Shown here: positions 2,380-30,519 of the stretch, one piece after another
Layout: the number at the start of each line of letters is the position of its first letter
How positions within the stretch are numbered: position 1 is the stretch's first letter
Virus record (IMG/VR): IMGVR_UViG_3300035698_035366
Coordinates: 232,120-296,119 of that record
DNA: 64,000 nucleotides
Strand: one strand, 5' to 3'
Notes under the pieces: generated by a model
What the model saw: the letters and a program-made list of their open reading frames with translations, nothing else
Database searches by the model: none
Told to the model about the DNA's origin: nothing
Translations under genes and position numbers: made by a program

Positions 2380-3312
2380 ATGGATAATCAATGCAGGACT
2401 ACGGAAGAATTATATGATGAATGTAATCGGATCGTTAAGGAATCTGAACATGTATCAATCACACCATCCAAATATGTAAATTTTGATCATGCGTTTGTGG
2501 AGAACCCAGAGCCAGTTTCAATGGTGTGGTACCTAAGTGAAGATACAGATGATCACCAACAGGCGTTTGGTGAATTTATAGTTTCTTCCGCCTTTAATGG
2601 TGGTTACTGGTATGATACAGATCCCGTAACACAATGGGAAGTAAATGGTTCCGGTAGCATGGCTATGGAAAAATGGATACGTGAGGAATTATTCAATAAC
2701 GGCCTTCATCCATATCATTGCCAAGACCGTCAAAAAGTTATAAAGAAGCTTTATCCAAGTCTTGATTTGCAGCCAAATGCAGCACATCGAAAAAGAATTA
2801 TATCTGAACTTGCGTTTAATAACCGTCGATTTGCAGAACCCATTATGCGTCAAAGACACACAAATCGAGAAGAATACACTTTCAATTGGCTCGATGTTTC
2901 ATTTTTAGCAGATTGCTTACCTGAATCATTTGGTGGAGATCCGTATTTGAAAAAGGCTTGTTTAGTATATCTCATATTTACGGGTTGGCTTCGATCAAAG
3001 GGTATTAAAGTTACTGCTGATTTCCCAATCCCAACCGATTATCAAATGCCACGAATTTTCCAATATGAAGGAGCAATTGATATTACAGTAGCTTTTGAAA
3101 ACGAATTGAATGCCGGGAAGCTTGTTGATGTAACATCACCAGAAGTAATGGCTTTTAGAGCAGCGGGAATTGTTGTCGCACATGAACTTGCTGAACGTTA
3201 TGGTCTCGATGATTACCAGATTGATAATGTACTGTTTAGTCTGTATCGCAAAGACGAAAACTTCATAAAAAACTCTGTAAAACCAATGCGTTGCATGAGC
3301 ATGTGGTTCTAA
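2380..3312 (+). CDS. Queuosine salvage / queuosine-nucleotide glycosylase-like protein (DUF2419/QNG1 family)
   Basis: Motifs F..DPYLKKAcL and PTDYQMPRIF..G.I, then EVMAFRAAGIVVAHEL and YQIDNVLF, match the family pattern. Confidence 0.7.
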   Translation: MDNQCRTTEELYDECNRIVKESEHVSITPSKYVNFDHAFVENPEPVSMVWYLSEDTDDHQQAFGEFIVSSAFNGGYWYDTDPVTQWEVNGSGSMAMEKWIREELFNNGLHPYHCQDRQKVIKKLYPSLDLQPNAAHRKRIISELAFNNRRFAEPIMRQRHTNREEYTFNWLDVSFLADCLPESFGGDPYLKKACLVYLIFTGWLRSKGIKVTADFPIPTDYQMPRIFQYEGAIDITVAFENELNAGKLVDVTSPEVMAFRAAGIVVAHELAERYGLDDYQIDNVLFSLYRKDENFIKNSVKPMRCMSMWF

Positions 3313-3570: not shown

Positions 3571-4017
3571 ATGACAAACATTACAACAAACCGCCGCGCG
3601 AAATTTGACTACGAACTGGAACAATCCTACGAAGCGGGGATTGAGCTCGTTGGTTCAGAAGTTAAGACTCTTCGAACTCGTGGAGCCAGCATTGTCGAAT
3701 CATATGTAGAGGTCAAAGACGACGAATGTTGGTTAATTAATGCTAACATTGAACCATATGAACCAGCTAGGATTAATCATGAGCCAAAGCGTCGCCGGAA
3801 GCTTTTGTTGCACCGGCGTGAAATCGACCAGATGACAGTGAAAGTTCAACAGCGTGGATATACTATTGTCCCAGTAAAAATGTATTTTAATTCCAGAGGC
3901 CGAGTGAAGATTGAAATTGCTATCGGCAAGGGGAAGCATACATATGATAAGAAAAGGGCTATTCGTGATCGTATAGTTGATCGAGAAACCCAACGAGAGA
4001 TGAAGAATTTAGGTTAA
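3571..4017 (+). CDS. smpB: SsrA (tmRNA)-binding protein SmpB
   Basis: NRRAKFDY, EAGIELVGSEVK, RRRKLLLHRREI, GKGKHTYDKK; ATG 6 nt after a TATAAT box (leaderless). Confidence 0.97.
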   Translation: MTNITTNRRAKFDYELEQSYEAGIELVGSEVKTLRTRGASIVESYVEVKDDECWLINANIEPYEPARINHEPKRRRKLLLHRREIDQMTVKVQQRGYTIVPVKMYFNSRGRVKIEIAIGKGKHTYDKKRAIRDRIVDRETQREMKNLG

Positions 4018-12762: not shown

Positions 12763-12837
12763 CGCCCCATAGTTTATCGGTTTAGAATTCCGGTTTTTCA
12801 CACCGGCGAGCGGGGTTCGATTCCCCGTGGGGCGACC
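12763..12837 (+). tRNA. tRNA-Glu(TTC)
   Basis: cgcccca/tggggcg acceptor; ccggt-ttTTCac-accgg. Confidence 0.9.
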
Positions 12838-13772: not shown

Positions 13773-13850
13773 CGCCCCATAGTTTATCGGTTTTAGAACG
13801 CCGGGTTCTCAACCCGGAAAGCGCGGGTTCAACTCCCCGTGGGGCGACCA
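13773..13850 (+). tRNA. tRNA-Glu(CTC)
   Basis: ccggg-ttCTCaa-cccgg; paralog of 12763; CCA. Confidence 0.88.
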
Positions 13851-16668: not shown

Positions 16669-16742
16669 GCTCCTGTGATGTTCTGGGAACATATCCGGCT
16701 GTCTACCGGACGAGGTGGGTTCAATTCCCATCAGGAGCGCCA
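16669..16742 (+). tRNA. tRNA-Asp(GTC)
   Basis: tccgg-ctGTCta-ccgga; G73-CCA. Confidence 0.85.
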
Positions 16743-16745
16743 ATT

Positions 16746-16818
16746 GGGCGTGTGGTGAAGCGGTTAACACAGTGGATTGTCTATCCACCATTCGCAGGTT
16801 CAAGTCCTGTCACGCTCG
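16746..16818 (+). tRNA. tRNA-Asp(GTC)
   Basis: gtgga-ttGTCta-tccac. Confidence 0.87.
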
Positions 16819-16868
16819 CAAAGCTTAAATACTAAATAGTATATAATAATATTATTGAGGTTTAAATT

Positions 16869-18158: not shown

Positions 18159-18237
18159 GCGTCTGTATGCCGCCGGTTTTCGAGACCGGAGAAAGCTAAC
18201 TGGACACATGCGGGTTCGACTCCTGCCAGGCGCGCCA
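18159..18237 (+). tRNA. tRNA-Arg(TCG) with D-loop displaced 3' of the anticodon arm
   Basis: gcgtctg/caggcgc; ccggt-ttTCGag-accgg; agctaactgga after the arm; CCA. Confidence 0.72.
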
Positions 18238-24722: not shown

Positions 24723-24805
24723 GGAAGCTTAATTGGGCTGGGCCCGAGACCGCCTTGAAAGCGGATCGTACCGAGAGGTATGGGGTTCGATTCCTCAGGC
24801 TTCCG
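24723..24805 (+). tRNA. tRNA-Ser(TGA)
   Basis: ccgc-ctTGAaa-gcgg; long variable arm; G73. Confidence 0.87.
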
Positions 24806-24815
24806 CAGAATTTAT

Positions 24816-24889
24816 TGGGGTATAGTATAATGGTAGTGCAGAGGGTTTTGATCCCTCTGGCCCGGGTTCGATTCCTGGTACCCCAGCCA
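24816..24889 (+). tRNA. tRNA-Gln(TTG)
   Basis: gaggg-ttTTGat-ccctc; CCA. Confidence 0.92.
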
Positions 24890-25260: not shown

Positions 25261-25377
25261 GGGCCGATAATAAAAGGTTACCCAAACAGCAGGTCGTGAG
25301 TTCAAACCTCACTCGCAGTCATTGTTGATTGTGATAGCTCAGTTGGTAGAGCAGCCGTCATTACGCTTTTATTGCCC
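25261..25377 (+). ncRNA. Y RNA-like (YrlA-type) RNA
   Basis: gggcCGA..aataaaag/cttttatt-gccc stem; T arm, closed acceptor tcgcagtca-ttgt-tgattgtga, then D arm tagctcagttggtagagc. Confidence 0.8.
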
Positions 25378-25393
25378 ACTTGCCCTTTACTTT

Positions 25394-25477
25394 GGACGAT
25401 AATCTTGGATGGGTCCAAGGACTGCCTCGAAAACAGATTGTACCGAAAGGTATCTGGTTCAATTCCAGTGTCGTCCG
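25394..25477 (+). tRNA. tRNA-Ser(CGA)
   Basis: ctgc-ctCGAaa-acag; variable arm taccgaaaggta; G73. Confidence 0.82.
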
Positions 25478-25859: not shown

Positions 25860-26417
25860 ATGTCAAAAGAACTTAAAAAACATATGCGCACAATGCTTGA
25901 TCTAATGGAGGCTGATGTTACTCAGGGACCTTGGACTGGTCAAGGTGTTGGTCCGCAACAAGGTACAGGTAATATGTACAATATGACGACAGGACAGAAA
26001 GTCACTGGTCCAATGGATATGTCAAAGGCTGAAAAGCTAGATCTAGCTGATGTTTTTGGTGGCGATGAATATTCAACTATTAGAAAGCTCGGTTATACAT
26101 GGTTTGAAAAGCCAGGATATTTTAGTGATATTAAGGAGAAGACTTCCATTCCAAGAGGCGAGGTCGCCCGAGTTGAGCGTGCAATTGGTAGAAAATTAGA
26201 AAATGTTTACATGGGTGATTTAATAGTTCCATTTAAAGATGGGAATTATTATCCACAAGCTGATGCTGATTTTGAACGTTACCCAGAAGAAACTGTAATT
26301 GTCACTGTCAGTAAATGGGACGCAGAAGATAGCGATGAAGTTAGAGATGGTGATATATTTCTTGCAAACCGTACAGGTGCAAGCAAGTATTATCGTATGT
26401 GGATGCGCGTCATTTAA
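25860..26417 (+). CDS. Hypothetical late protein
   Basis: TATAAATA and RBS aagga upstream. Confidence 0.65.
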   Translation: MSKELKKHMRTMLDLMEADVTQGPWTGQGVGPQQGTGNMYNMTTGQKVTGPMDMSKAEKLDLADVFGGDEYSTIRKLGYTWFEKPGYFSDIKEKTSIPRGEVARVERAIGRKLENVYMGDLIVPFKDGNYYPQADADFERYPEETVIVTVSKWDAEDSDEVRDGDIFLANRTGASKYYRMWMRVI

Positions 26418-26429
26418 TCTCAAGTTTAT

Positions 26430-26503
26430 AGGGGGATAGTATAATGGTAGTGCAGCGGGTTCTGATCCCGCTGGTCGGGGTTCGATTCCCTGTCCCCCTG
26501 CCA
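26430..26503 (+). tRNA. tRNA-Gln(CTG)
   Basis: gcggg-ttCTGat-cccgc; CCA. Confidence 0.92.
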
Positions 26504-26688
26504 AATGAGAAAATTTATAATTATCTCAATATTTTGTTTTCTAACAAGCTGTACATCATATAGCCAATGTGCCAAGAATGGTGAAAATTGGGGGTATGTT
26601 TATGGTATATTTAAAACTAAAAATCCAGTTAAAATTAAAATCTATTCAATAGTAGGCCAAGAAATAGGTTCTAAATATTGCAAATAAC

Positions 26689-26760
26689 GCCGGTATAGTG
26701 ATAATGGTAGCACGAGGCATTGGTAATGCTTTAGTGGTGGTTCAATTCCTCCTATCGGCA
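26689..26760 (+). tRNA. tRNA-Thr(GGT)
   Basis: aggca-ttGGTaa-tgctt. Confidence 0.87.
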
Positions 26761-26872
26761 CTCAATTAAAAGGTTGACTAATGATGTAATCGTGTTATAA
26801 TAAAACATATTAAGGGAATGCCACGCGCCCATGCATATTGCAGAAAAACGTAAACTCCAATGGAGAAGCACA

Positions 26873-27607
26873 ATGGATCGAAAAGTTTGGAACATCGAAG
26901 AGTTTAACAAGGTTAATCTCCCCGAGGTTATTGGTTCAATAACCAATCGAAATAGATTCTCAGAATTTAACAGGACTCGCGTATTGGACCTGCCAATTCA
27001 TATGCCCGGGCAGGGATGGAAGATTCCATCCGAGATTAATAATTTCTTAGAACCAATCAAATTGGCTGCAAAAGCTGAAAGCCGCTTTGGTGATTTCCTA
27101 AACACTCATTACGTTTATGTGACAATTGATCAAAAGGTTGTCCAAGCCGGGAAGACTGGCCGTCGTGCTGGCGCCCATTCGGATGCCTATATAGAAGTAG
27201 ACGAAGAACAGCTTGATCTGATAGCTGAAAATGCTGATGCTATCGCTAAAGAAAAACAAGAAGTATCACATACATATGTTATTGCTGATCAAGTACCAAC
27301 GGAGTTTTTCAATGCGAAATTCCCGTTAGTGGATAGTTCATGCAACGGCGGATCATTAAAAACTTTTGATGAGATTGCAGAAAAAGCAGAAATAATAACG
27401 TATCCAGGATACACGTTGCTTCGTATGGATCCATATGTTGTTCACAGAAGCGCATTGGTTACAGAGACGATGGAACGAACATTTATGAAAATTAGCTTTT
27501 CGCGCAAAAAATATGCGAGGAAAGGAAATACAGTTAACCCAGGATTTGAATATGACTGGGAATTGACAGCGCGTTCACCTGATAAAAGAAATCATCCCTG
27601 GAAATAG
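26873..27607 (+). CDS. Putative 2OG-Fe(II) dioxygenase
   Basis: H-S-D ... VVHRS ... RTFMKISFS pattern; start 26873 after ggag. Confidence 0.55.
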   Translation: MDRKVWNIEEFNKVNLPEVIGSITNRNRFSEFNRTRVLDLPIHMPGQGWKIPSEINNFLEPIKLAAKAESRFGDFLNTHYVYVTIDQKVVQAGKTGRRAGAHSDAYIEVDEEQLDLIAENADAIAKEKQEVSHTYVIADQVPTEFFNAKFPLVDSSCNGGSLKTFDEIAEKAEIITYPGYTLLRMDPYVVHRSALVTETMERTFMKISFSRKKYARKGNTVNPGFEYDWELTARSPDKRNHPWK

Positions 27608-27662
27608 ATAGATAACTATACAATAATATTGTATACTGTTATCTTAATATAGGAGCGTTATT

Positions 27663-28526
27663 ATGACAGGATACACAACAAGAATTGCACCAAGCCCAAC
27701 GGGTGATATGCACCTGGGGACCGCTCGCACGGCTTATTTCAATTGGCTGATGGCTCGAGCATCAGGTGGTAAATTCATTCTTCGTATTGATGATACTGAT
27801 CTCGCAAGGAACGATCAGAAACATATTGATATTATTCTAGAGACAATGGAGTGGCTTGGGTTAACTTATGATGAGCTAGAATATCAGAGCAAACGTATCG
27901 ATGTGTATTATCGAGCAACAAATGATCTTGTCAAAAAGGGATTTACGACTACATTAGAGAATGGTGCAATTGCTGTTAATCTATCTTCTGTGATTGATTT
28001 CCCAACCACATGGCGCGATGAGATTTCAGGTGATATTAATATCACATCAACCAACCACGATCAAACAGATGGTATGATTCTTATTAAAGGAAATGGATAT
28101 CCGGGTTACAATTGGGCTTCGGTGGTTGATGATGTTGATCTTGGTGTAGATTATATTATTCGAGGCCATGATCATATCACAAACACTTCAAGCCAAGCAA
28201 TTCTTTATAAGTTACTAGATAAGCCATTGCCCAAATTTGCGCATGTTGGTTTAATTCACGCCAATAAAAAGAAAATGTCCAAGCGTGATGGTGCTGCGAG
28301 TATGATGCAGTATAAAGCCGATGGGTATGATCCAGACGCATTGTTGAATTTTATGCTTCGTCTTGGATGGGGGCCAACTATCGACGATAAAACGACTAAG
28401 ACTATTGACAAGGATCGTGCATTAGAGTTGTTTATTAATGGTGGACGAATGCGATCCGCCCCATCAAATTTAGATACAGCAATGCTAAATTCATATGATA
28501 GAAAATATAAGGCTAGAAAGAAATAA
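27663..28526 (+). CDS. Minimal glutamyl-tRNA synthetase-like protein (catalytic domain only; GluQ-RS-like)
   Basis: RIAPSPTGDMHLGTARTA, LRIDDTD, IRGHDH, KMSKR; 287 aa, no Zn-cysteine cluster, no anticodon-binding domain. Confidence 0.88.
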   Translation: MTGYTTRIAPSPTGDMHLGTARTAYFNWLMARASGGKFILRIDDTDLARNDQKHIDIILETMEWLGLTYDELEYQSKRIDVYYRATNDLVKKGFTTTLENGAIAVNLSSVIDFPTTWRDEISGDINITSTNHDQTDGMILIKGNGYPGYNWASVVDDVDLGVDYIIRGHDHITNTSSQAILYKLLDKPLPKFAHVGLIHANKKKMSKRDGAASMMQYKADGYDPDALLNFMLRLGWGPTIDDKTTKTIDKDRALELFINGGRMRSAPSNLDTAMLNSYDRKYKARKK

Positions 28527-28541
28527 TCTAGCCTTAGATCG

Positions 28542-28612
28542 ATGAGCCGAAGGTTTAGGGTTATCATTTTGACTTCTAATCAAACCAACACCCTTTTCCA
28601 CTCCTTGCTCAT
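28542..28612 (+). ncRNA. Minimal Y RNA-like RNA carrying an Arg(TCT) anticodon stem-loop
   Basis: atgagcCGAAGG/CCTTgctcat stem; gggttatcat shared with 23841; tttga-ctTCTaa-tcaaa. Confidence 0.7.
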
Positions 28613-28950
28613 TCTTAATAGGAAAAATAAATGAACATCGACGATATGATAAAACTAATTCGGCCAATACATAACGATATTTGTATTCTTTATGATACTA
28701 ATTTGGTTCGAGTTGTTGGTGTGGCTGAAGATGAAAGGGATTTGTATTATATTGTTCGAGATTTGGAACATCGAGATCATCCAGAACACTGGGCATCTGC
28801 GGTTGGGCATATTGTCAGCCTGAATGGGATTTACCCTGAAGAGCGATATAAACATATGGATGATGTATTTCGGATGAATGGTGCAGAAAGAAGTGAAGAA
28901 TTTATTGTTATCGTAGAAGAATAAGAGTTGTTCTTCTGACTAAATACGAT

Positions 28951-29361
28951 ATGTCATACAAAATTAGATACATACCGAATCTCATCGCGGCTCTTATAAC
29001 CAACACCATCGAGCCACCACCAGATAGAATGGTTGAGATACAAGAATGGTATGATCATATCAAAAAAAGCATATTAGAAGAAGGTTTCCGCAATCCCGTT
29101 GTCTTAACAGCAAAAGACGGTAAACTGGAACCACGTTATGGTGGTACAAGGGTTAAAATTGCACAAGAACACGGAATGAAAATACCAGCTATTATTGCAG
29201 ATTTTGATGATCAATTTCCCGAAGCTGAAACATTGGAAACATGGGAAGTTCCAGATAAATTCCTAGACAAACCAAAGAAAATACTCTTTAAGACCTATGG
29301 AATCAATGCTTCGGGCTTACCTGATACCGTAGAAGAATTCAATAAAAAACTTGACAAATAG
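28951..29361 (+). CDS. ParB/Srx-like domain protein
   Basis: SILEEGFRNPVVL...GGTRVKIA. Confidence 0.7.
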   Translation: MSYKIRYIPNLIAALITNTIEPPPDRMVEIQEWYDHIKKSILEEGFRNPVVLTAKDGKLEPRYGGTRVKIAQEHGMKIPAIIADFDDQFPEAETLETWEVPDKFLDKPKKILFKTYGINASGLPDTVEEFNKKLDK

Positions 29362-29409
29362 ATAAAACACTATACAATAGTTATTGTAATTATATAGAAA
29401 GATCGTATC

Positions 29410-30519
29410 ATGCGTATTGGAGAAATCGTAACGGTAGTTGTTTTTGTGTTTTTCATGTGTATCTCATATGGAGCAAACGCAACTGTAATCGGACAGAGCG
29501 AAGGCTTGTCTTTTATCAAAGCCGCCAATAACGCTCGCAGCGGGACGACAATGGATTTCCGCCAGCTTCAGAATTTTTTTAGCCCGACACAGGGAAACGA
29601 TAACCAGATTTTGAGCCGCACCGAAGCTCTTCTGGCGGAACTTGATGACGATGACAGCATCAAGCGGATATCGGTGATCGCAACCTTAATGCTTGAATCA
29701 GGAAAGGTTTATGAAGCCAACATTACAAACGGCTATCAGCTTTCCGTTGATAGCACGGGTTGGGATTTTGGTCCCAACGGTTCGCCTGTTCATAAGGATT
29801 TCCGTAAAGTAACTGAACATGATGTGGTATCTAGCGGATACGCTGTAAGCGATAACGATCTCGTTGACGGTCTTTCTGGAGTTCGAAATTTCTCAGATCG
29901 CGCAATCAACGGTGTTTATACTGTAACAGTCGTGTTTACTGGTCGGGATACGAAATTCGATACATTTGAAATTAATGGGTCTAACGTGATCGTTCGAAAC
30001 GTTAGTGAGATATCTAACCGTTTGGATATGACGAAACCAGGAGATGAGAAACTGCACAAGTCAATTGCAATTCGAACTTGGACAGTTGTAACTGAAAATC
30101 AGCTTAATGTTGCTTTCCCGAAGTTTCCTGAAAATTCCGTATTGTCGGCAATCATTATTACTCCAGTCAACATGCTACAGGTAATTGACCGTCGAGTTGA
30201 GGATTTGATCGACTCTCGCAAGCCGTTCGTGTACAATGCTGGTGGGTTTGGATCACGTAATGGATTTGATTATGGCATATCCCGATATTTTGCATACTCT
30301 AAGGATGGGTTCATCTCTACCCGAGGCCATGGTGGTTGCTGTAGTATCCCAGGCGATGATGGGCCATACGACGTACCGGTGTTTGTTCCTGGCGGAGACG
30401 GTGACCCAACCGATGTTCCAGGTATTACCATTCCAGGTACCGTTCCGGAACCCGGTGCGCTTGCACTATTCGGAATCGGCATTATTGGATTATTAATTAC
30501 TCGTCGTAGGAAAAAATAA
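29410..30519 (+). CDS. Secreted PEP-CTERM protein
   Basis: N-terminal signal peptide; C-terminal VPEPGALALFGIGIIGLLITRRRKK. Confidence 0.9.
   Translation: MRIGEIVTVVVFVFFMCISYGANATVIGQSEGLSFIKAANNARSGTTMDFRQLQNFFSPTQGNDNQILSRTEALLAELDDDDSIKRISVIATLMLESGKVYEANITNGYQLSVDSTGWDFGPNGSPVHKDFRKVTEHDVVSSGYAVSDNDLVDGLSGVRNFSDRAINGVYTVTVVFTGRDTKFDTFEINGSNVIVRNVSEISNRLDMTKPGDEKLHKSIAIRTWTVVTENQLNVAFPKFPENSVLSAIIITPVNMLQVIDRRVEDLIDSRKPFVYNAGGFGSRNGFDYGISRYFAYSKDGFISTRGHGGCCSIPGDDGPYDVPVFVPGGDGDPTDVPGITIPGTVPEPGALALFGIGIIGLLITRRRKK

What the first reader, a model, noticed from the sequence alone, without database searches (positions are those of the whole stretch)
26873..28612. Minimal GluRS-like enzyme flanked by a putative 2OG-Fe(II) dioxygenase and a Y-like RNA; queuosine link
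SEEN: a 287-aa class I catalytic domain with HLGT and KMSKR, lacking the Zn insertion and the anticodon-binding domain. The window also encodes a queuosine-salvage-like glycosylase (2380-3312) and three tRNA-Asp(GTC) with unusual loops (pyrimidine at position 37). KNOWN: GluQ-RS (YadB) is a catalytic-domain-only GluRS paralog that glutamylates queuosine on tRNA-Asp. INFERENCE: a phage module for wobble-base (Q/GluQ) remodelling, or an anticodon-blind GluRS.
Basis: partly seen in the sequence, partly recalled or inferred. Interest (0 to 1): 0.65.

Follow-up and report, generated by a model that had tools for sequence, protein, structure and literature searches.

The report
Minimal phage glutamyl-tRNA synthetase, not GluQRS
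A salt-lake jumbo phage encodes a conserved 287-residue glutamyl-tRNA synthetase stripped to its catalytic core, one of a large clade found here only in viral or phage-like contexts, which most likely charges phage tRNA-Glu without reading the anticodon and shows no real link to queuosine.

Summary
The ORF at 27663-28526 is real, intact and under strong purifying selection (dN/dS about 0.085). It is a bacterial-type GluRS catalytic core with HLGT and KMSKR. It lacks the zinc-binding part of the acceptor-binding insertion and the whole anticodon-binding domain.

It belongs to a large clade of 260-330-residue proteins. All seven inspected contexts and all IMG/VR hits are phage-like, on contigs up to 608 kb. 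The best cellular match is an ordinary full-length gltX at 39% identity.

By HMM score, PDB sequence search, fold search and diagnostic columns it is GltX-like, not GluQRS-like. Eleven columns are shared with GltX against GluQRS, and none the other way.

In at least five lineages the gene lies within about 0.7 kb of phage tRNA-Glu genes (3 nt away in one locus). tRNA-Asp lies nearby in one locus only. None of 15 other phage records carrying this enzyme, nor the window's own record, encodes a tRNA-guanine transglycosylase.

- **Upstream ORF (26873-27607):** plausibly a 2OG-Fe(II) oxygenase, but its pairing with the synthetase holds only in the nearest relative.
- **"Y-like RNA" spacer:** no Rfam match, and absent from that relative.

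Verdict: the anticodon-blind GluRS reading is supported; the queuosine/GluQ module is not.

The parts
26774..26801 (+). Sigma-70-like promoter candidate (TTGACT, 16-nt spacer, TG-extended TATAAT; 11 of 12 matches). It lies just after tRNA-Thr and ahead of the two ORFs.
   Evidence: This is a consensus match only; co-transcription of the two ORFs is inferred.
26873..27607 (+). 244-aa 2OG-Fe(II) oxygenase-like protein. A longer frame starts at 26831, but homologs begin at the 26873 Met.
   Evidence: Homologs of 232-268 aa include Salicola phage SCTP-2 and Ralstonia phage RsoM2USA. H102, S103, D104, H191 and R202 are invariant. The AF2 model has pLDDT 85. The leading PDB fold matches are 2OG oxygenases. 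phrog_1843 matches at 2.5e-26 with unknown function. No Pfam hit.
27651..27655 (+). Shine-Dalgarno AGGAG, 7 nt upstream of the ATG of the synthetase gene.
   Evidence: Sequence read.
27663..28526 (+). Minimal GluRS (287 aa): Rossmann catalytic fold, a shortened CP/acceptor-binding insertion and the stem-contact-fold domain. It ends at the boundary where GltX's anticodon-binding domain would begin.
27711..27722 (+). HIGH signature (HLGT, residues 17-20).
   Evidence: H17 and G19 are invariant in 40 family members.
27942..28001 (+). Short replacement (residues 94-113) of the roughly 55-residue zinc-binding part of GluRS domain 2.
   Evidence: phmmer alignment to 7k86 and the four-sequence alignment. 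The sister clade 'mini2' lacks the whole of domain 2.
28272..28286 (+). KMSKS signature (KMSKR, residues 204-208).
   Evidence: S206, K207 and R208 are invariant. R208 matches GltX, where GluQRS has Q.
28508..28613 (+). Two hairpins: 28508-28536, which overlaps the stop codon, and 28541-28613.
   Evidence: Fold -31.2 kcal/mol, z -3.2. No Rfam hit. No terminator-like T-tract. The spacer is absent in L208 and is not repeated elsewhere in the genome.
12763..12837 (+). tRNA-Glu(UUC), a candidate substrate with an unusual C1:G72 acceptor start.
13773..13850 (+). tRNA-Glu(CUC), a candidate substrate with the same acceptor stem as the UUC isoacceptor.

Best explanation
The gene encodes an active, minimal, bacterial-type glutamyl-tRNA synthetase. 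It belongs to a clade found here only in phage-like contexts.

**Shown**
- The protein keeps the Rossmann fold with HIGH and KMSKS, the conserved class I active-site signature residues, a remnant of the acceptor-binding insertion and the stem-contact-fold domain.
- It has lost the zinc-binding sub-domain and the whole anticodon-binding domain.
- The clade is conserved and is GltX-like.
- No anticodon-binding domain is encoded elsewhere in the near-complete relatives' genomes or in the window's own 79%-complete record.
- Phage tRNA-Glu genes recur nearby.

**Inferred**
- It activates glutamate and transfers it to the 3' end of the phage's own tRNA-Glu (UUC and CUC isoacceptors).
- It recognises the tRNA through the acceptor end, the D-arm and the body rather than the anticodon.
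- This gives the phage a supply of Glu-tRNA that does not depend on how the host GluRS treats phage tRNAs.
- Some charging of tRNA-Gln (non-discriminating behaviour) is possible.
- The conserved basic C-terminal helix (R280, K281, K283, K286) may substitute for lost tRNA contacts.
For: **Identity**
- Pfam tRNA-synt_1c matches at 4.8e-62.
- gltX_bact scores 260 bits against 160-163 for the GluQRS models.
- PDB phmmer gives 195 bits to bacterial GluRS against 73 to E. coli GluQRS.
- The AF2 model (pLDDT 94) matches GluRS 7k86 at TM 0.87 and 37% identity. GluQRS ranks only 42nd.

**GltX-type residues**
- 27 columns are conserved across GltX, GluQRS and the mini clade.
- 11 columns are shared with GltX against GluQRS, including R22, T23, T45, R208, N229 and W236.
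- 0 columns are shared with GluQRS against GltX.

**Selection and spread**
- The 120 best-scoring clusters in the word search are all 54-78% identical to the window protein and 277-365 aa long.
- 48 columns are invariant in the 40-member alignment.
- dN/dS is about 0.085.

**Clade**
- mini plus mini2 form one clade with 100/100 support, apart from the GluQRS clade (100/99) in the ML tree.

**Distribution**
- All seven contexts inspected are phage-like.
- 30 IMG/VR loci lie on contigs up to 608 kb.
- The best hit among the representative genomes of 185,579 species is full-length gltX at 39% identity.

**Substrate**
- tRNA-Glu genes lie within about 0.7 kb of the gene in L108 (3 nt away), L110, L112, L113, L120, L131 and L144, which represent at least 5 lineages.
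- Glu makes up 20 of 96 neighbouring tRNAs, against 2 of 34 in this phage's own set.

**No partner domain**
- PF19269 is absent in the own record and in 14 of 15 related records, including 6 that are at least 93% complete.

**Precedent**
- A C-truncated E. coli GluRS remains specific for tRNA-Glu. This is taken from the title of Dubois et al. 2009 as cited in PMC3927822.
Against: - No biochemical data exist, and no RNA-seq run holds the region.
- Part (and in mini2 all) of the acceptor-binding insertion is deleted, including the column that is invariably Arg in GltX and GluQRS (Ala here; R141 in E. coli GltX). This removes contacts that canonical GluRS is thought to use for the acceptor arm, so the acceptor could differ from a normal tRNA 3' end.
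- In this window the nearest tRNAs are Thr and Gln. The two tRNA-Glu genes lie 14-15 kb away.
- The tRNA-Glu proximity is suggestive only. It covers 5 of about 9 lineages that have any tRNA within 1 kb, and these regions are tRNA-rich.
- The AU test does not reject a common clade with GluQRS (p 0.14).
Confidence: 0.6

Rival explanations
1. GluQRS-like enzyme. It would glutamylate a modified wobble base (queuosine or a relative) of the phage's unusual U37 tRNA-Asp, or of another tRNA, docking the anticodon loop in the active site.
For: - The catalytic-domain-only architecture is the same as GluQRS.
- Both phage tRNA-Asp(GUC) have an odd U37.
- A weak DUF2419/Q_salvage-like ORF lies at 2380-3312.
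- The AU test cannot reject a shared clade with GluQRS (p 0.14).
- One mini2 locus (L144) has two tRNA-Asp genes next to the gene.
Against: - It scores 160.6 bits on TIGR03838 against a cut-off of 276.7, less than true E. coli GltX scores on that model (264.6).
- It shares 0 columns specifically with GluQRS, against 11 with GltX.
- It lacks the Zn/Cys sub-domain that GluQRS keeps.
- No TGT is found in its own record or in 15 other related records. QueC is not found above its cut-off.
- tRNA-Asp lies nearby in 1 of 32 loci, against tRNA-Glu in 8.
Confidence: 0.08
2. Non-discriminating or Gln-directed GluRS. Its main role would be to make Glu-tRNA-Gln from the phage tRNA-Gln genes, for host GatCAB to amidate.
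For: - In this window the nearest upstream tRNAs include tRNA-Gln(CUG) at 26430-26503 and tRNA-Gln(UUG) at 24816-24889.
- By established knowledge, loss of the anticodon-binding domain removes the element (Arg358 in T. thermophilus GluRS) that discriminates C36 from G36.
- Among the best structural matches is a non-discriminating GluRS, 2cfo.
Against: - tRNA-Gln lies near the gene in only 3 of 32 related loci, against 8 with tRNA-Glu.
- C-truncated E. coli GluRS is reported to stay specific for tRNA-Glu (title cited).
- No amidotransferase was looked for in the phage.
Confidence: 0.15
3. Glutamate-activating enzyme with a non-tRNA acceptor (a small molecule, protein or other RNA), by analogy with MshC or the amino-acid:carrier-protein ligases derived from aaRS.
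For: - Most or all of the acceptor-arm-binding insertion and the anticodon domain are lost.
- The clade sits on a long stem branch of 0.9-1.0.
- No protein neighbour is conserved that would indicate a role in translation.
Against: - The stem-contact-fold domain and the GltX-specific residues that GluQRS has lost are retained.
- The gene is repeatedly adjacent to tRNA-Glu and embedded in tRNA/aaRS-rich regions.
- By established knowledge, GluRS-type enzymes need tRNA to activate glutamate.
Confidence: 0.12
4. A decaying fragment of a captured host gltX, with no function.
For: It is shorter than any cellular GltX. It falls below the gltX equivalog cut-off (260 against 290 bits).
Against: - dN/dS is about 0.085.
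- More than 120 homologs have the same ends, at 54-78% identity.
- 48 columns are invariant, including the catalytic motifs.
- The model is confident and compact.
- The gene has its own ribosome-binding site.
Confidence: 0.01

Closest known systems
Bacterial glutamyl-tRNA synthetase (GltX; TIGR00464; e.g. PDB 7k86, 8i9i, 2cfo, 1j09)
   Same: - Rossmann fold with HIGH and KMSKS.
- The conserved class I active-site signature residues, and 11 GltX-specific columns.
- The stem-contact-fold domain.
- 32-37% identity and TM 0.85-0.88.
   Different: - No anticodon-binding domains 4-5.
- No zinc-binding part of domain 2; the mini2 clade has no domain 2 at all.
- The column that is invariably Arg in GltX (R141 in E. 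coli) is Ala here.
- A basic C-terminal helix is conserved only in this clade.
- Below the equivalog cut-off (260 against 290 bits).
- Seen here only in phage-like contexts.
GluQRS / YadB (TIGR03838; PDB 1nzj, 4a91)
   Same: It is a GluRS paralog of about 290-310 aa made of the catalytic part only, with no anticodon-binding domain.
   Different: - The ML tree places the two clades apart, though the AU test is inconclusive (p 0.14).
- 160 bits against a cut-off of 277.
- 26% identity, TM 0.74.
- No GluQRS-specific columns.
- GluQRS keeps the Cys/Tyr zinc cluster and has KLSKQ, whereas this protein has KMSKR like GltX.
- No association with queuosine genes.
Full-length GluRS of huge phages (Al-Shayeb et al. 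2020, PMC7162821, Extended Data Fig. 7)
   Same: They are phage-encoded GluRS, thought to charge the phage's own tRNA variants.
   Different: - Those are 440-540 aa with an anticodon-binding domain, and they nest among host-like GltX (viral_long rows).
- The mini clade is a separate long-stemmed lineage without that domain.
- The papers searched do not mention a truncated form.
Engineered C-truncated E. coli GluRS (Dubois et al. 2009, cited in PMC3927822)
   Same: A GluRS catalytic part without the distal anticodon-binding domain, reported to remain specific for tRNA-Glu.
   Different: It is a laboratory construct that is stimulated by the free distal domain. The phage enzymes are natural, further reduced, and have no distal domain encoded in the near-complete relatives' genomes or in the window's own 79%-complete record.

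Membership tests
GluRS, bacterial type (GltX) | Class I catalytic domain PF00749 with HIGH and KMSKS | tested here: met
   Pfam 4.8e-62. HLGT and KMSKR are present, with the key residues invariant in the family.
GluRS, bacterial type (GltX) | Score above the TIGR00464 equivalog cut-off (289.95 bits) | tested here: not met
   260.2 bits. The match ends at profile position 315 of 470.
GluRS, bacterial type (GltX) | C-terminal anticodon-binding domain (PF19269) | tested here: not met
   Absent from the ORF and from the 296-kb record. Absent from 14 of 15 related records.
GluRS, bacterial type (GltX) | GltX-specific conserved residues, as opposed to GluQRS | tested here: met
   11 columns where mini matches GltX but not GluQRS; 0 columns the other way.
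GluRS, bacterial type (GltX) | Esterifies glutamate to A76 of tRNA-Glu | not testable with these tools
   Indirect support only: tRNA-Glu genes lie next to the gene in at least 5 lineages.
GluQRS (YadB) | Catalytic-domain-only architecture of about 290-310 aa | tested here: met
   287 aa, no anticodon-binding domain.
GluQRS (YadB) | Score above the TIGR03838 cut-off (276.7 bits) | tested here: not met
   160.6 bits. E. coli GluQRS scores 380.8 and E. coli GltX 264.6 on the same model.
GluQRS (YadB) | Falls inside the GluQRS clade | tested here: inconclusive
   The ML trees place the mini clade (100/100) apart from GluQRS (100/99). The AU test does not reject forcing them together (p 0.14).
GluQRS (YadB) | Zinc-binding Cys/Tyr cluster in the insertion domain | tested here: not met
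   The region is deleted.
GluQRS (YadB) | Glutamylates queuosine-34 of tRNA-Asp | not testable with these tools
   Context argues against it: no TGT in 16 phage records, and tRNA-Asp nearby in 1 of 32 loci.
2OG-Fe(II) oxygenase (upstream ORF 26873-27607) | Double-stranded beta-helix fold | tested here: met
   The AF2 model has pLDDT 85. The leading Foldseek matches and all top VIA-align matches are 2OG oxygenases, with Z up to 9.4 over 165-185 residues. This Z is only moderately above background.
2OG-Fe(II) oxygenase (upstream ORF 26873-27607) | HxD...H iron triad and a basic 2OG-binding residue | tested here: met
   H102, D104, H191 and R202 are invariant in 34 homologs. Their placement in the metal site was not checked on the model.
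2OG-Fe(II) oxygenase (upstream ORF 26873-27607) | Match to a curated family model | tested here: not met
   No Pfam or NCBIfam hit. Only phrog_1843, of unknown function.
Y RNA / YrlA (spacer 28527-28630) | Match to the Rfam covariance models | tested here: not met
   No hit at E up to 10 in 26400-29000.
Y RNA / YrlA (spacer 28527-28630) | Conserved in related genomes | tested here: not met
   The spacer is absent in the closest relative, L208.

The most novel reading that the evidence does not exclude
The mini clade (283-330 aa) and the even smaller mini2 clade (260-285 aa, with no CP domain at all) would be the smallest natural tRNA-charging synthetases known. On this reading they are anticodon-independent GluRS that form private pairs with phage tRNA-Glu species carrying non-standard acceptor ends. 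In this phage that end is C1:G72; in relatives it is G1:U72. Such pairs would let huge phages keep Glu decoding running independently of the host GluRS. They would also offer a living model of the proposed primordial catalytic-domain-only GluRS, and ready-made compact orthogonal pairs.
Probability: 0.3. Interest if true: 0.75.

Novelty: new variant of a known kind. Interest (0 to 1): 0.58.

Why it matters
Phage-encoded synthetases and the truncated paralog GluQRS are both known. A deep, widespread clade of GltX-type enzymes that has shed both the anticodon-binding domain and the zinc sub-domain, seen here only in phage-like contexts, was not found in the papers searched here.

If it charges tRNA-Glu, three things follow:
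- A class I synthetase can work in nature with little more than the Rossmann fold and the stem-contact fold.
- The idea that ancestral GluRS was catalytic-domain-only gains support.
- It suggests how huge phages make their own tRNA sets usable.
- It provides very small candidate parts for orthogonal translation.

It also corrects a tempting misannotation: a short GluRS is not necessarily GluQRS.

Tried and rejected
**Searches that found nothing**
- Megablast of 26500-29500 against GenBank phages gave no match. A single-protein pattern scan of IMG/VR also gave none.
- tblastn against GenBank phages gave nothing above 39% identity. No deposited phage record in that collection carries a mini-clade member, apart from the mini2 form in LR745206.1.
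- Rfam found no Y RNA in the spacer and nothing near the TROVE gene.

**Neighbourhood conservation**
- tblastn of the 258-aa upstream ORF against the ten relatives' loci fetched by then found nothing.
- All-against-all clustering of ORFs in 34 loci found no protein neighbour shared beyond sub-lineages. Those sub-lineage neighbours include RyR-domain proteins and a carbamoyltransferase.
- A gene two upstream in L001/L002 carries PF13532 (2OG-FeII_Oxy_2). It was not matched by tblastn with the window's oxygenase-like ORF.

**Other tests**
- A separately encoded anticodon-binding domain is rejected.
- Queuosine genes: no TGT. QueC gives only a 19-bit sub-threshold PP-loop hit.

**Phylogeny**
- The careful tree on all 94 rows did not finish in two 300-s runs. 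A 48-row careful tree was used instead.
- The AU test of mini plus GluQRS as one clade was inconclusive.

**Considered and set aside**
- D43 (RIDDTD in place of RIEDTD) was considered as a specificity change. It was set aside because some true GltX also have D, and my GltX sample was drawn through a pattern containing it.

**Not run**
- Complex prediction, because no binding claim is made.
- Read laying, because only contig-level DNA runs hold the region.
Full report
**Setting.** The window is the last 64 kb of a 296,119-bp IMG/VR virus record, with CheckV completeness 79%. It carries 34 ARAGORN tRNA genes, almost all genes on one strand, and about 39% GC. Near-identical DNA occurs only in salt-lake metagenomes. 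Other translation-related genes include SmpB. This is a jumbo phage with a large translation toolkit.

**The observation.** The ORF at 27663-28526 (+) encodes 287 residues, with AGGAG 7 nt before the ATG.
- It matches Pfam tRNA-synt_1c at 4.8e-62.
- HLGT (residues 17-20) and KMSKR (204-208) are present.
- Against the bacterial gltX model it scores 260.2 bits. The match stops at profile position 315 of 470 and skips profile positions 92-150.
- Alignment to solved GluRS structures shows the same gap: query residues 94-113 stand in for about 55 residues of GluRS.
- A direct alignment with E. coli GltX shows that the missing part is the Cys/His zinc-binding stretch.

**Is it a real, functional gene?**
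- The word-index search returned 3,797 homologs. The best 120 are all 277-365 aa (median about 295), 54-78% identical, and carry PF00749 only.
- In a 40-member alignment 48 columns are invariant, including R7, S11, H17, G19, D44, Y149, D156/D157, R167-G168, D170-H171, N174-T175 and S206-K207-R208.
- Against two relatives dN/dS is about 0.085, with synonymous sites near saturation.
- AlphaFold2 gives a compact model with mean pLDDT 94.

A decaying gltX fragment is excluded.

**GltX-type or GluQRS-type?** Every similarity measure points to GltX.
- *HMM scores:* 260 bits on the gltX model against 160-163 on the GluQRS models. Genuine E. coli GltX scores 264.6 on the GluQRS model and E. coli GluQRS scores 380.8. 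The phage protein is therefore further from GluQRS than ordinary GltX is.
- *PDB sequence search:* 195 bits to GluRS of Stenotrophomonas against 73 bits to E. coli GluQRS.
- *Foldseek:* GluRS structures fill ranks 1-41 (TM 0.79-0.88, up to 37% identity). GluQRS appears at rank 42 (TM 0.74, 26%).
- *Diagnostic columns:* I aligned 33 short phage proteins, 42 full-length GluRS (cellular and viral) and 17 GluQRS. GluQRS rows were selected with TIGR03838 from 61 proteobacterial genomes plus E. coli, Acinetobacter and Collinsella. Eleven columns are conserved and shared by the phage clade and GltX but not GluQRS: R22, T23, G35, F38, T45, R208, A226, N229, W236, F257 and D271. No column is shared by the phage clade and GluQRS against GltX.
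- *Trees:* The short phage proteins form one clade (SH-aLRT 100 in the 94-row tree; 100/100 in a 48-row careful tree) on a long stem. GluQRS forms its own clade (99; 100/99), next to an alphaproteobacterial GltX pair.
- *Caveat:* An AU test does not reject a tree that forces the two short groups together (delta lnL 4.8, p 0.14). Both have long stems, so independent truncation is the preferred reading but not a proven one.

**Distribution.**
- A pattern scan of one genome for each of 185,579 prokaryote species, using two motifs invariant in the clade, found only ordinary 440-540-aa gltX genes at 39% identity or less.
- IMG/VR yielded 30 loci at 43-58% identity, with ORFs of 274-328 aa, on contigs of 17-608 kb.
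- It also yielded a second, smaller group (mini2, 260-285 aa, about 36% identity). Mini2 lacks the whole insertion domain and includes the 635-kb phage LR745206.1.
- Seven looked-up contexts are all phage-like: one-strand arrays of small unknown ORFs with DNA polymerase B, ligase, CysRS, an AsnRS/AspRS-type enzyme, RF-1 and tRNAs.
- No GenBank phage record in the collection carries a mini-clade member above 40% identity.

**What does it act on?** ARAGORN on 32 related loci found 96 tRNA genes, of which 20 are tRNA-Glu, 3 tRNA-Gln and 2 tRNA-Asp. In this phage's own set Glu is 2 of 34.
- tRNA-Glu genes end 3 nt before the start codon in L108.
- They lie 230-510 nt upstream in L110, L112 and L113.
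- One lies 88 nt downstream in L120.
- One lies 665 nt upstream in L131.
- In the mini2 locus L144 one lies about 790 nt upstream, followed by two tRNA-Asp genes.
- In L111 the two tRNA-Glu genes lie about 2 kb upstream.

On the tree the loci with tRNA-Glu within 1 kb represent at least five separate lineages. By my rough reckoning, about nine lineages have any tRNA within 1 kb. With a chance of about 0.2 per lineage of including a Glu, five or more has a probability of about 0.02. This is suggestive, not decisive.

No anticodon-binding domain is encoded anywhere in the own record. The same holds for 14 of 15 related records, six of which are 93-100% complete. The exception is LR745206.1, which also has a normal 498-aa GluRS. 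A split enzyme is therefore unlikely.

The literature held here cites a C-truncated E. coli GluRS that stays specific for tRNA-Glu (Dubois et al. 2009, title cited in PMC3927822).

Taken together, I infer a 3'-end glutamylating enzyme for phage tRNA-Glu that does not read the anticodon. Both tRNA-Glu genes of this phage share the acceptor stem CGCCCCA/UGGGGCG, that is C1:G72. Several relatives' tRNA-Glu have G1:U72. E. coli GluRS uses G1:C72 and U2:A71 as identity elements (established knowledge, not tested here). This makes a private enzyme-tRNA pair an attractive idea, but it remains untested.

**The queuosine link.**
- No TGT family member is found in the own record or in 15 other related phage records. 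QueC gives only a 19-bit sub-threshold hit.
- The ORF at 2380-3312 resembles Q_salvage/DUF2419 only weakly. Pfam gives 17.4 bits against a cut-off of 25. The only PDB sequence hits are three DUF2419 enzymes at E about 0.4, over the same C-terminal 70 residues. This is a lead, not an identification.
- Two, not three, tRNA-Asp(GUC) genes are found. Both have U at position 37, and no other tRNA in the window has a pyrimidine there. That oddity is real and remains unexplained, but nothing ties it to the synthetase.

**The flanks.**
- *Upstream ORF:* Homologs are 232-268 aa and begin at the Met at 26873. They include hypothetical proteins of Salicola phage SCTP-2 and Ralstonia phage RsoM2USA.
  - It has no Pfam, NCBIfam or PDB sequence match.
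  - H102-S-D104, H191 and R202 are invariant.
  - Its model (pLDDT 85) aligns only with 2OG-Fe(II) oxygenases: Foldseek E 1e-4, VIA Z up to 9.4 over 165-185 residues.
  - I accept "2OG-Fe(II) oxygenase-like" at moderate confidence.
  - It sits beside the synthetase only here and in the nearest relative, L208. It is not beside the other 30-odd family members.
- *Promoter:* A strong promoter-like site at 26774-26801 could drive both genes.
- *Downstream spacer:* It folds into two hairpins (z -3.2). It has no Rfam match, no T-tract terminator and no copy elsewhere in the genome. It is absent from L208, where the stop codon abuts the ATG of the conserved 99-aa downstream gene. It is not a conserved RNA gene.

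**Literature.** Huge-phage synthetases, including GluRS, are described as related to those of hosts and possibly charging phage tRNA variants (PMC7162821). A review of aaRS paralogs lists only YadB/GluQRS under GluRS (PMC9437257). Searches combining GluRS, phage and truncation or anticodon-binding terms found no description of this clade. Absence from this library is not proof of absence.

**Verdict.**
- The protein observation is confirmed.
- The oxygenase call is plausible.
- The Y-like RNA is not confirmed.
- The queuosine module is not supported.

I rate it a new variant of a known kind, of moderate to good interest.

Noticed in passing
G000:C1:120281-121150 (outside the window) and window 25267-25378 (+): The phage encodes a TROVE/Ro60 (Rsr)-like protein: PF05731 at 90.5 bits, in a 554-aa open frame. 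Separately, window 25267-25378 gives a weak full-length YrlA (Y RNA-like) match of 24.6 bits against a gathering score of 69. It has a T-arm-like hairpin followed by a D-arm-like hairpin. This could be a real Y RNA-like gene or two tRNA fragments.
   Followed up: partly
window 16669-16742 and 16746-16819: Both tRNA-Asp(GUC) genes have U at position 37 (loops CUGUCUA and UUGUCUA). All the other 32 tRNAs have a purine there. Relatives' tRNA-Asp in L144 have the usual A37 and C38.
   Followed up: partly
window 12763-12837 and 13773-13850: Both tRNA-Glu isoacceptors share the acceptor stem CGCCCCA/UGGGGCG, so the first pair is C1:G72 rather than the usual bacterial G1:C72. Several relatives' tRNA-Glu have G1:U72.
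   Followed up: partly
window 24723-24804 and 25394-25476 (+): Two long-variable-arm tRNA-like genes were missed by ARAGORN. They score 43 and 40 bits on the Rfam tRNA-Sec model, below its gathering score. Their anticodon loops read UGA and CGA, so they are probably tRNA-Ser. A further weak tRNA lies at 18159-18234, with an apparent UCG anticodon.
   Followed up: partly
window 3571-4017 (+): A phage-encoded SmpB (Pfam 8.8e-55). ARAGORN finds no tmRNA in the 296-kb record, although two related phage loci (L114, L131) do carry tmRNA genes.
   Followed up: partly
window 29410-30519 (+): A 369-aa secreted-looking protein ends in a PEP-CTERM sorting signal (PF07589, 28.7 bits). This hints that the host has an exosortase system.
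   Followed up: no
loci L138, L139, L143, L144, L157 and L018 (LR745206.1:23578-24189): A sister clade ('mini2') of 260-285-aa GluRS-like proteins lacks the entire CP/acceptor-binding domain. LR745206.1 also carries a normal 498-aa GluRS.
   Followed up: partly
loci L011, L013, L015, L109, L209, L210: Within one sub-lineage the mini-GluRS gene is flanked by a RyR-domain protein (PF02026, about 220 aa) upstream and a carbamoyltransferase (Carbam_trans_N/C, about 550 aa) downstream. In L013 a CysRS also follows. Neither the RyR-domain protein nor the carbamoyltransferase was found within 8 kb of the gene in the window.
   Followed up: partly
window 2380-3312 (+): A 310-aa ORF has a weak, sub-threshold resemblance to queuine-salvage DUF2419 enzymes, limited to the C-terminal 70-90 residues. 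The equally long neighbouring ORF at 1370-2302 is unrelated to it.
   Followed up: partly
window 27616-27640 (+): An AT-rich near-palindrome (TATACAATAATATTGTATA) lies between the oxygenase-like gene and the synthetase gene. It may be an operator or an internal promoter element.
   Followed up: no
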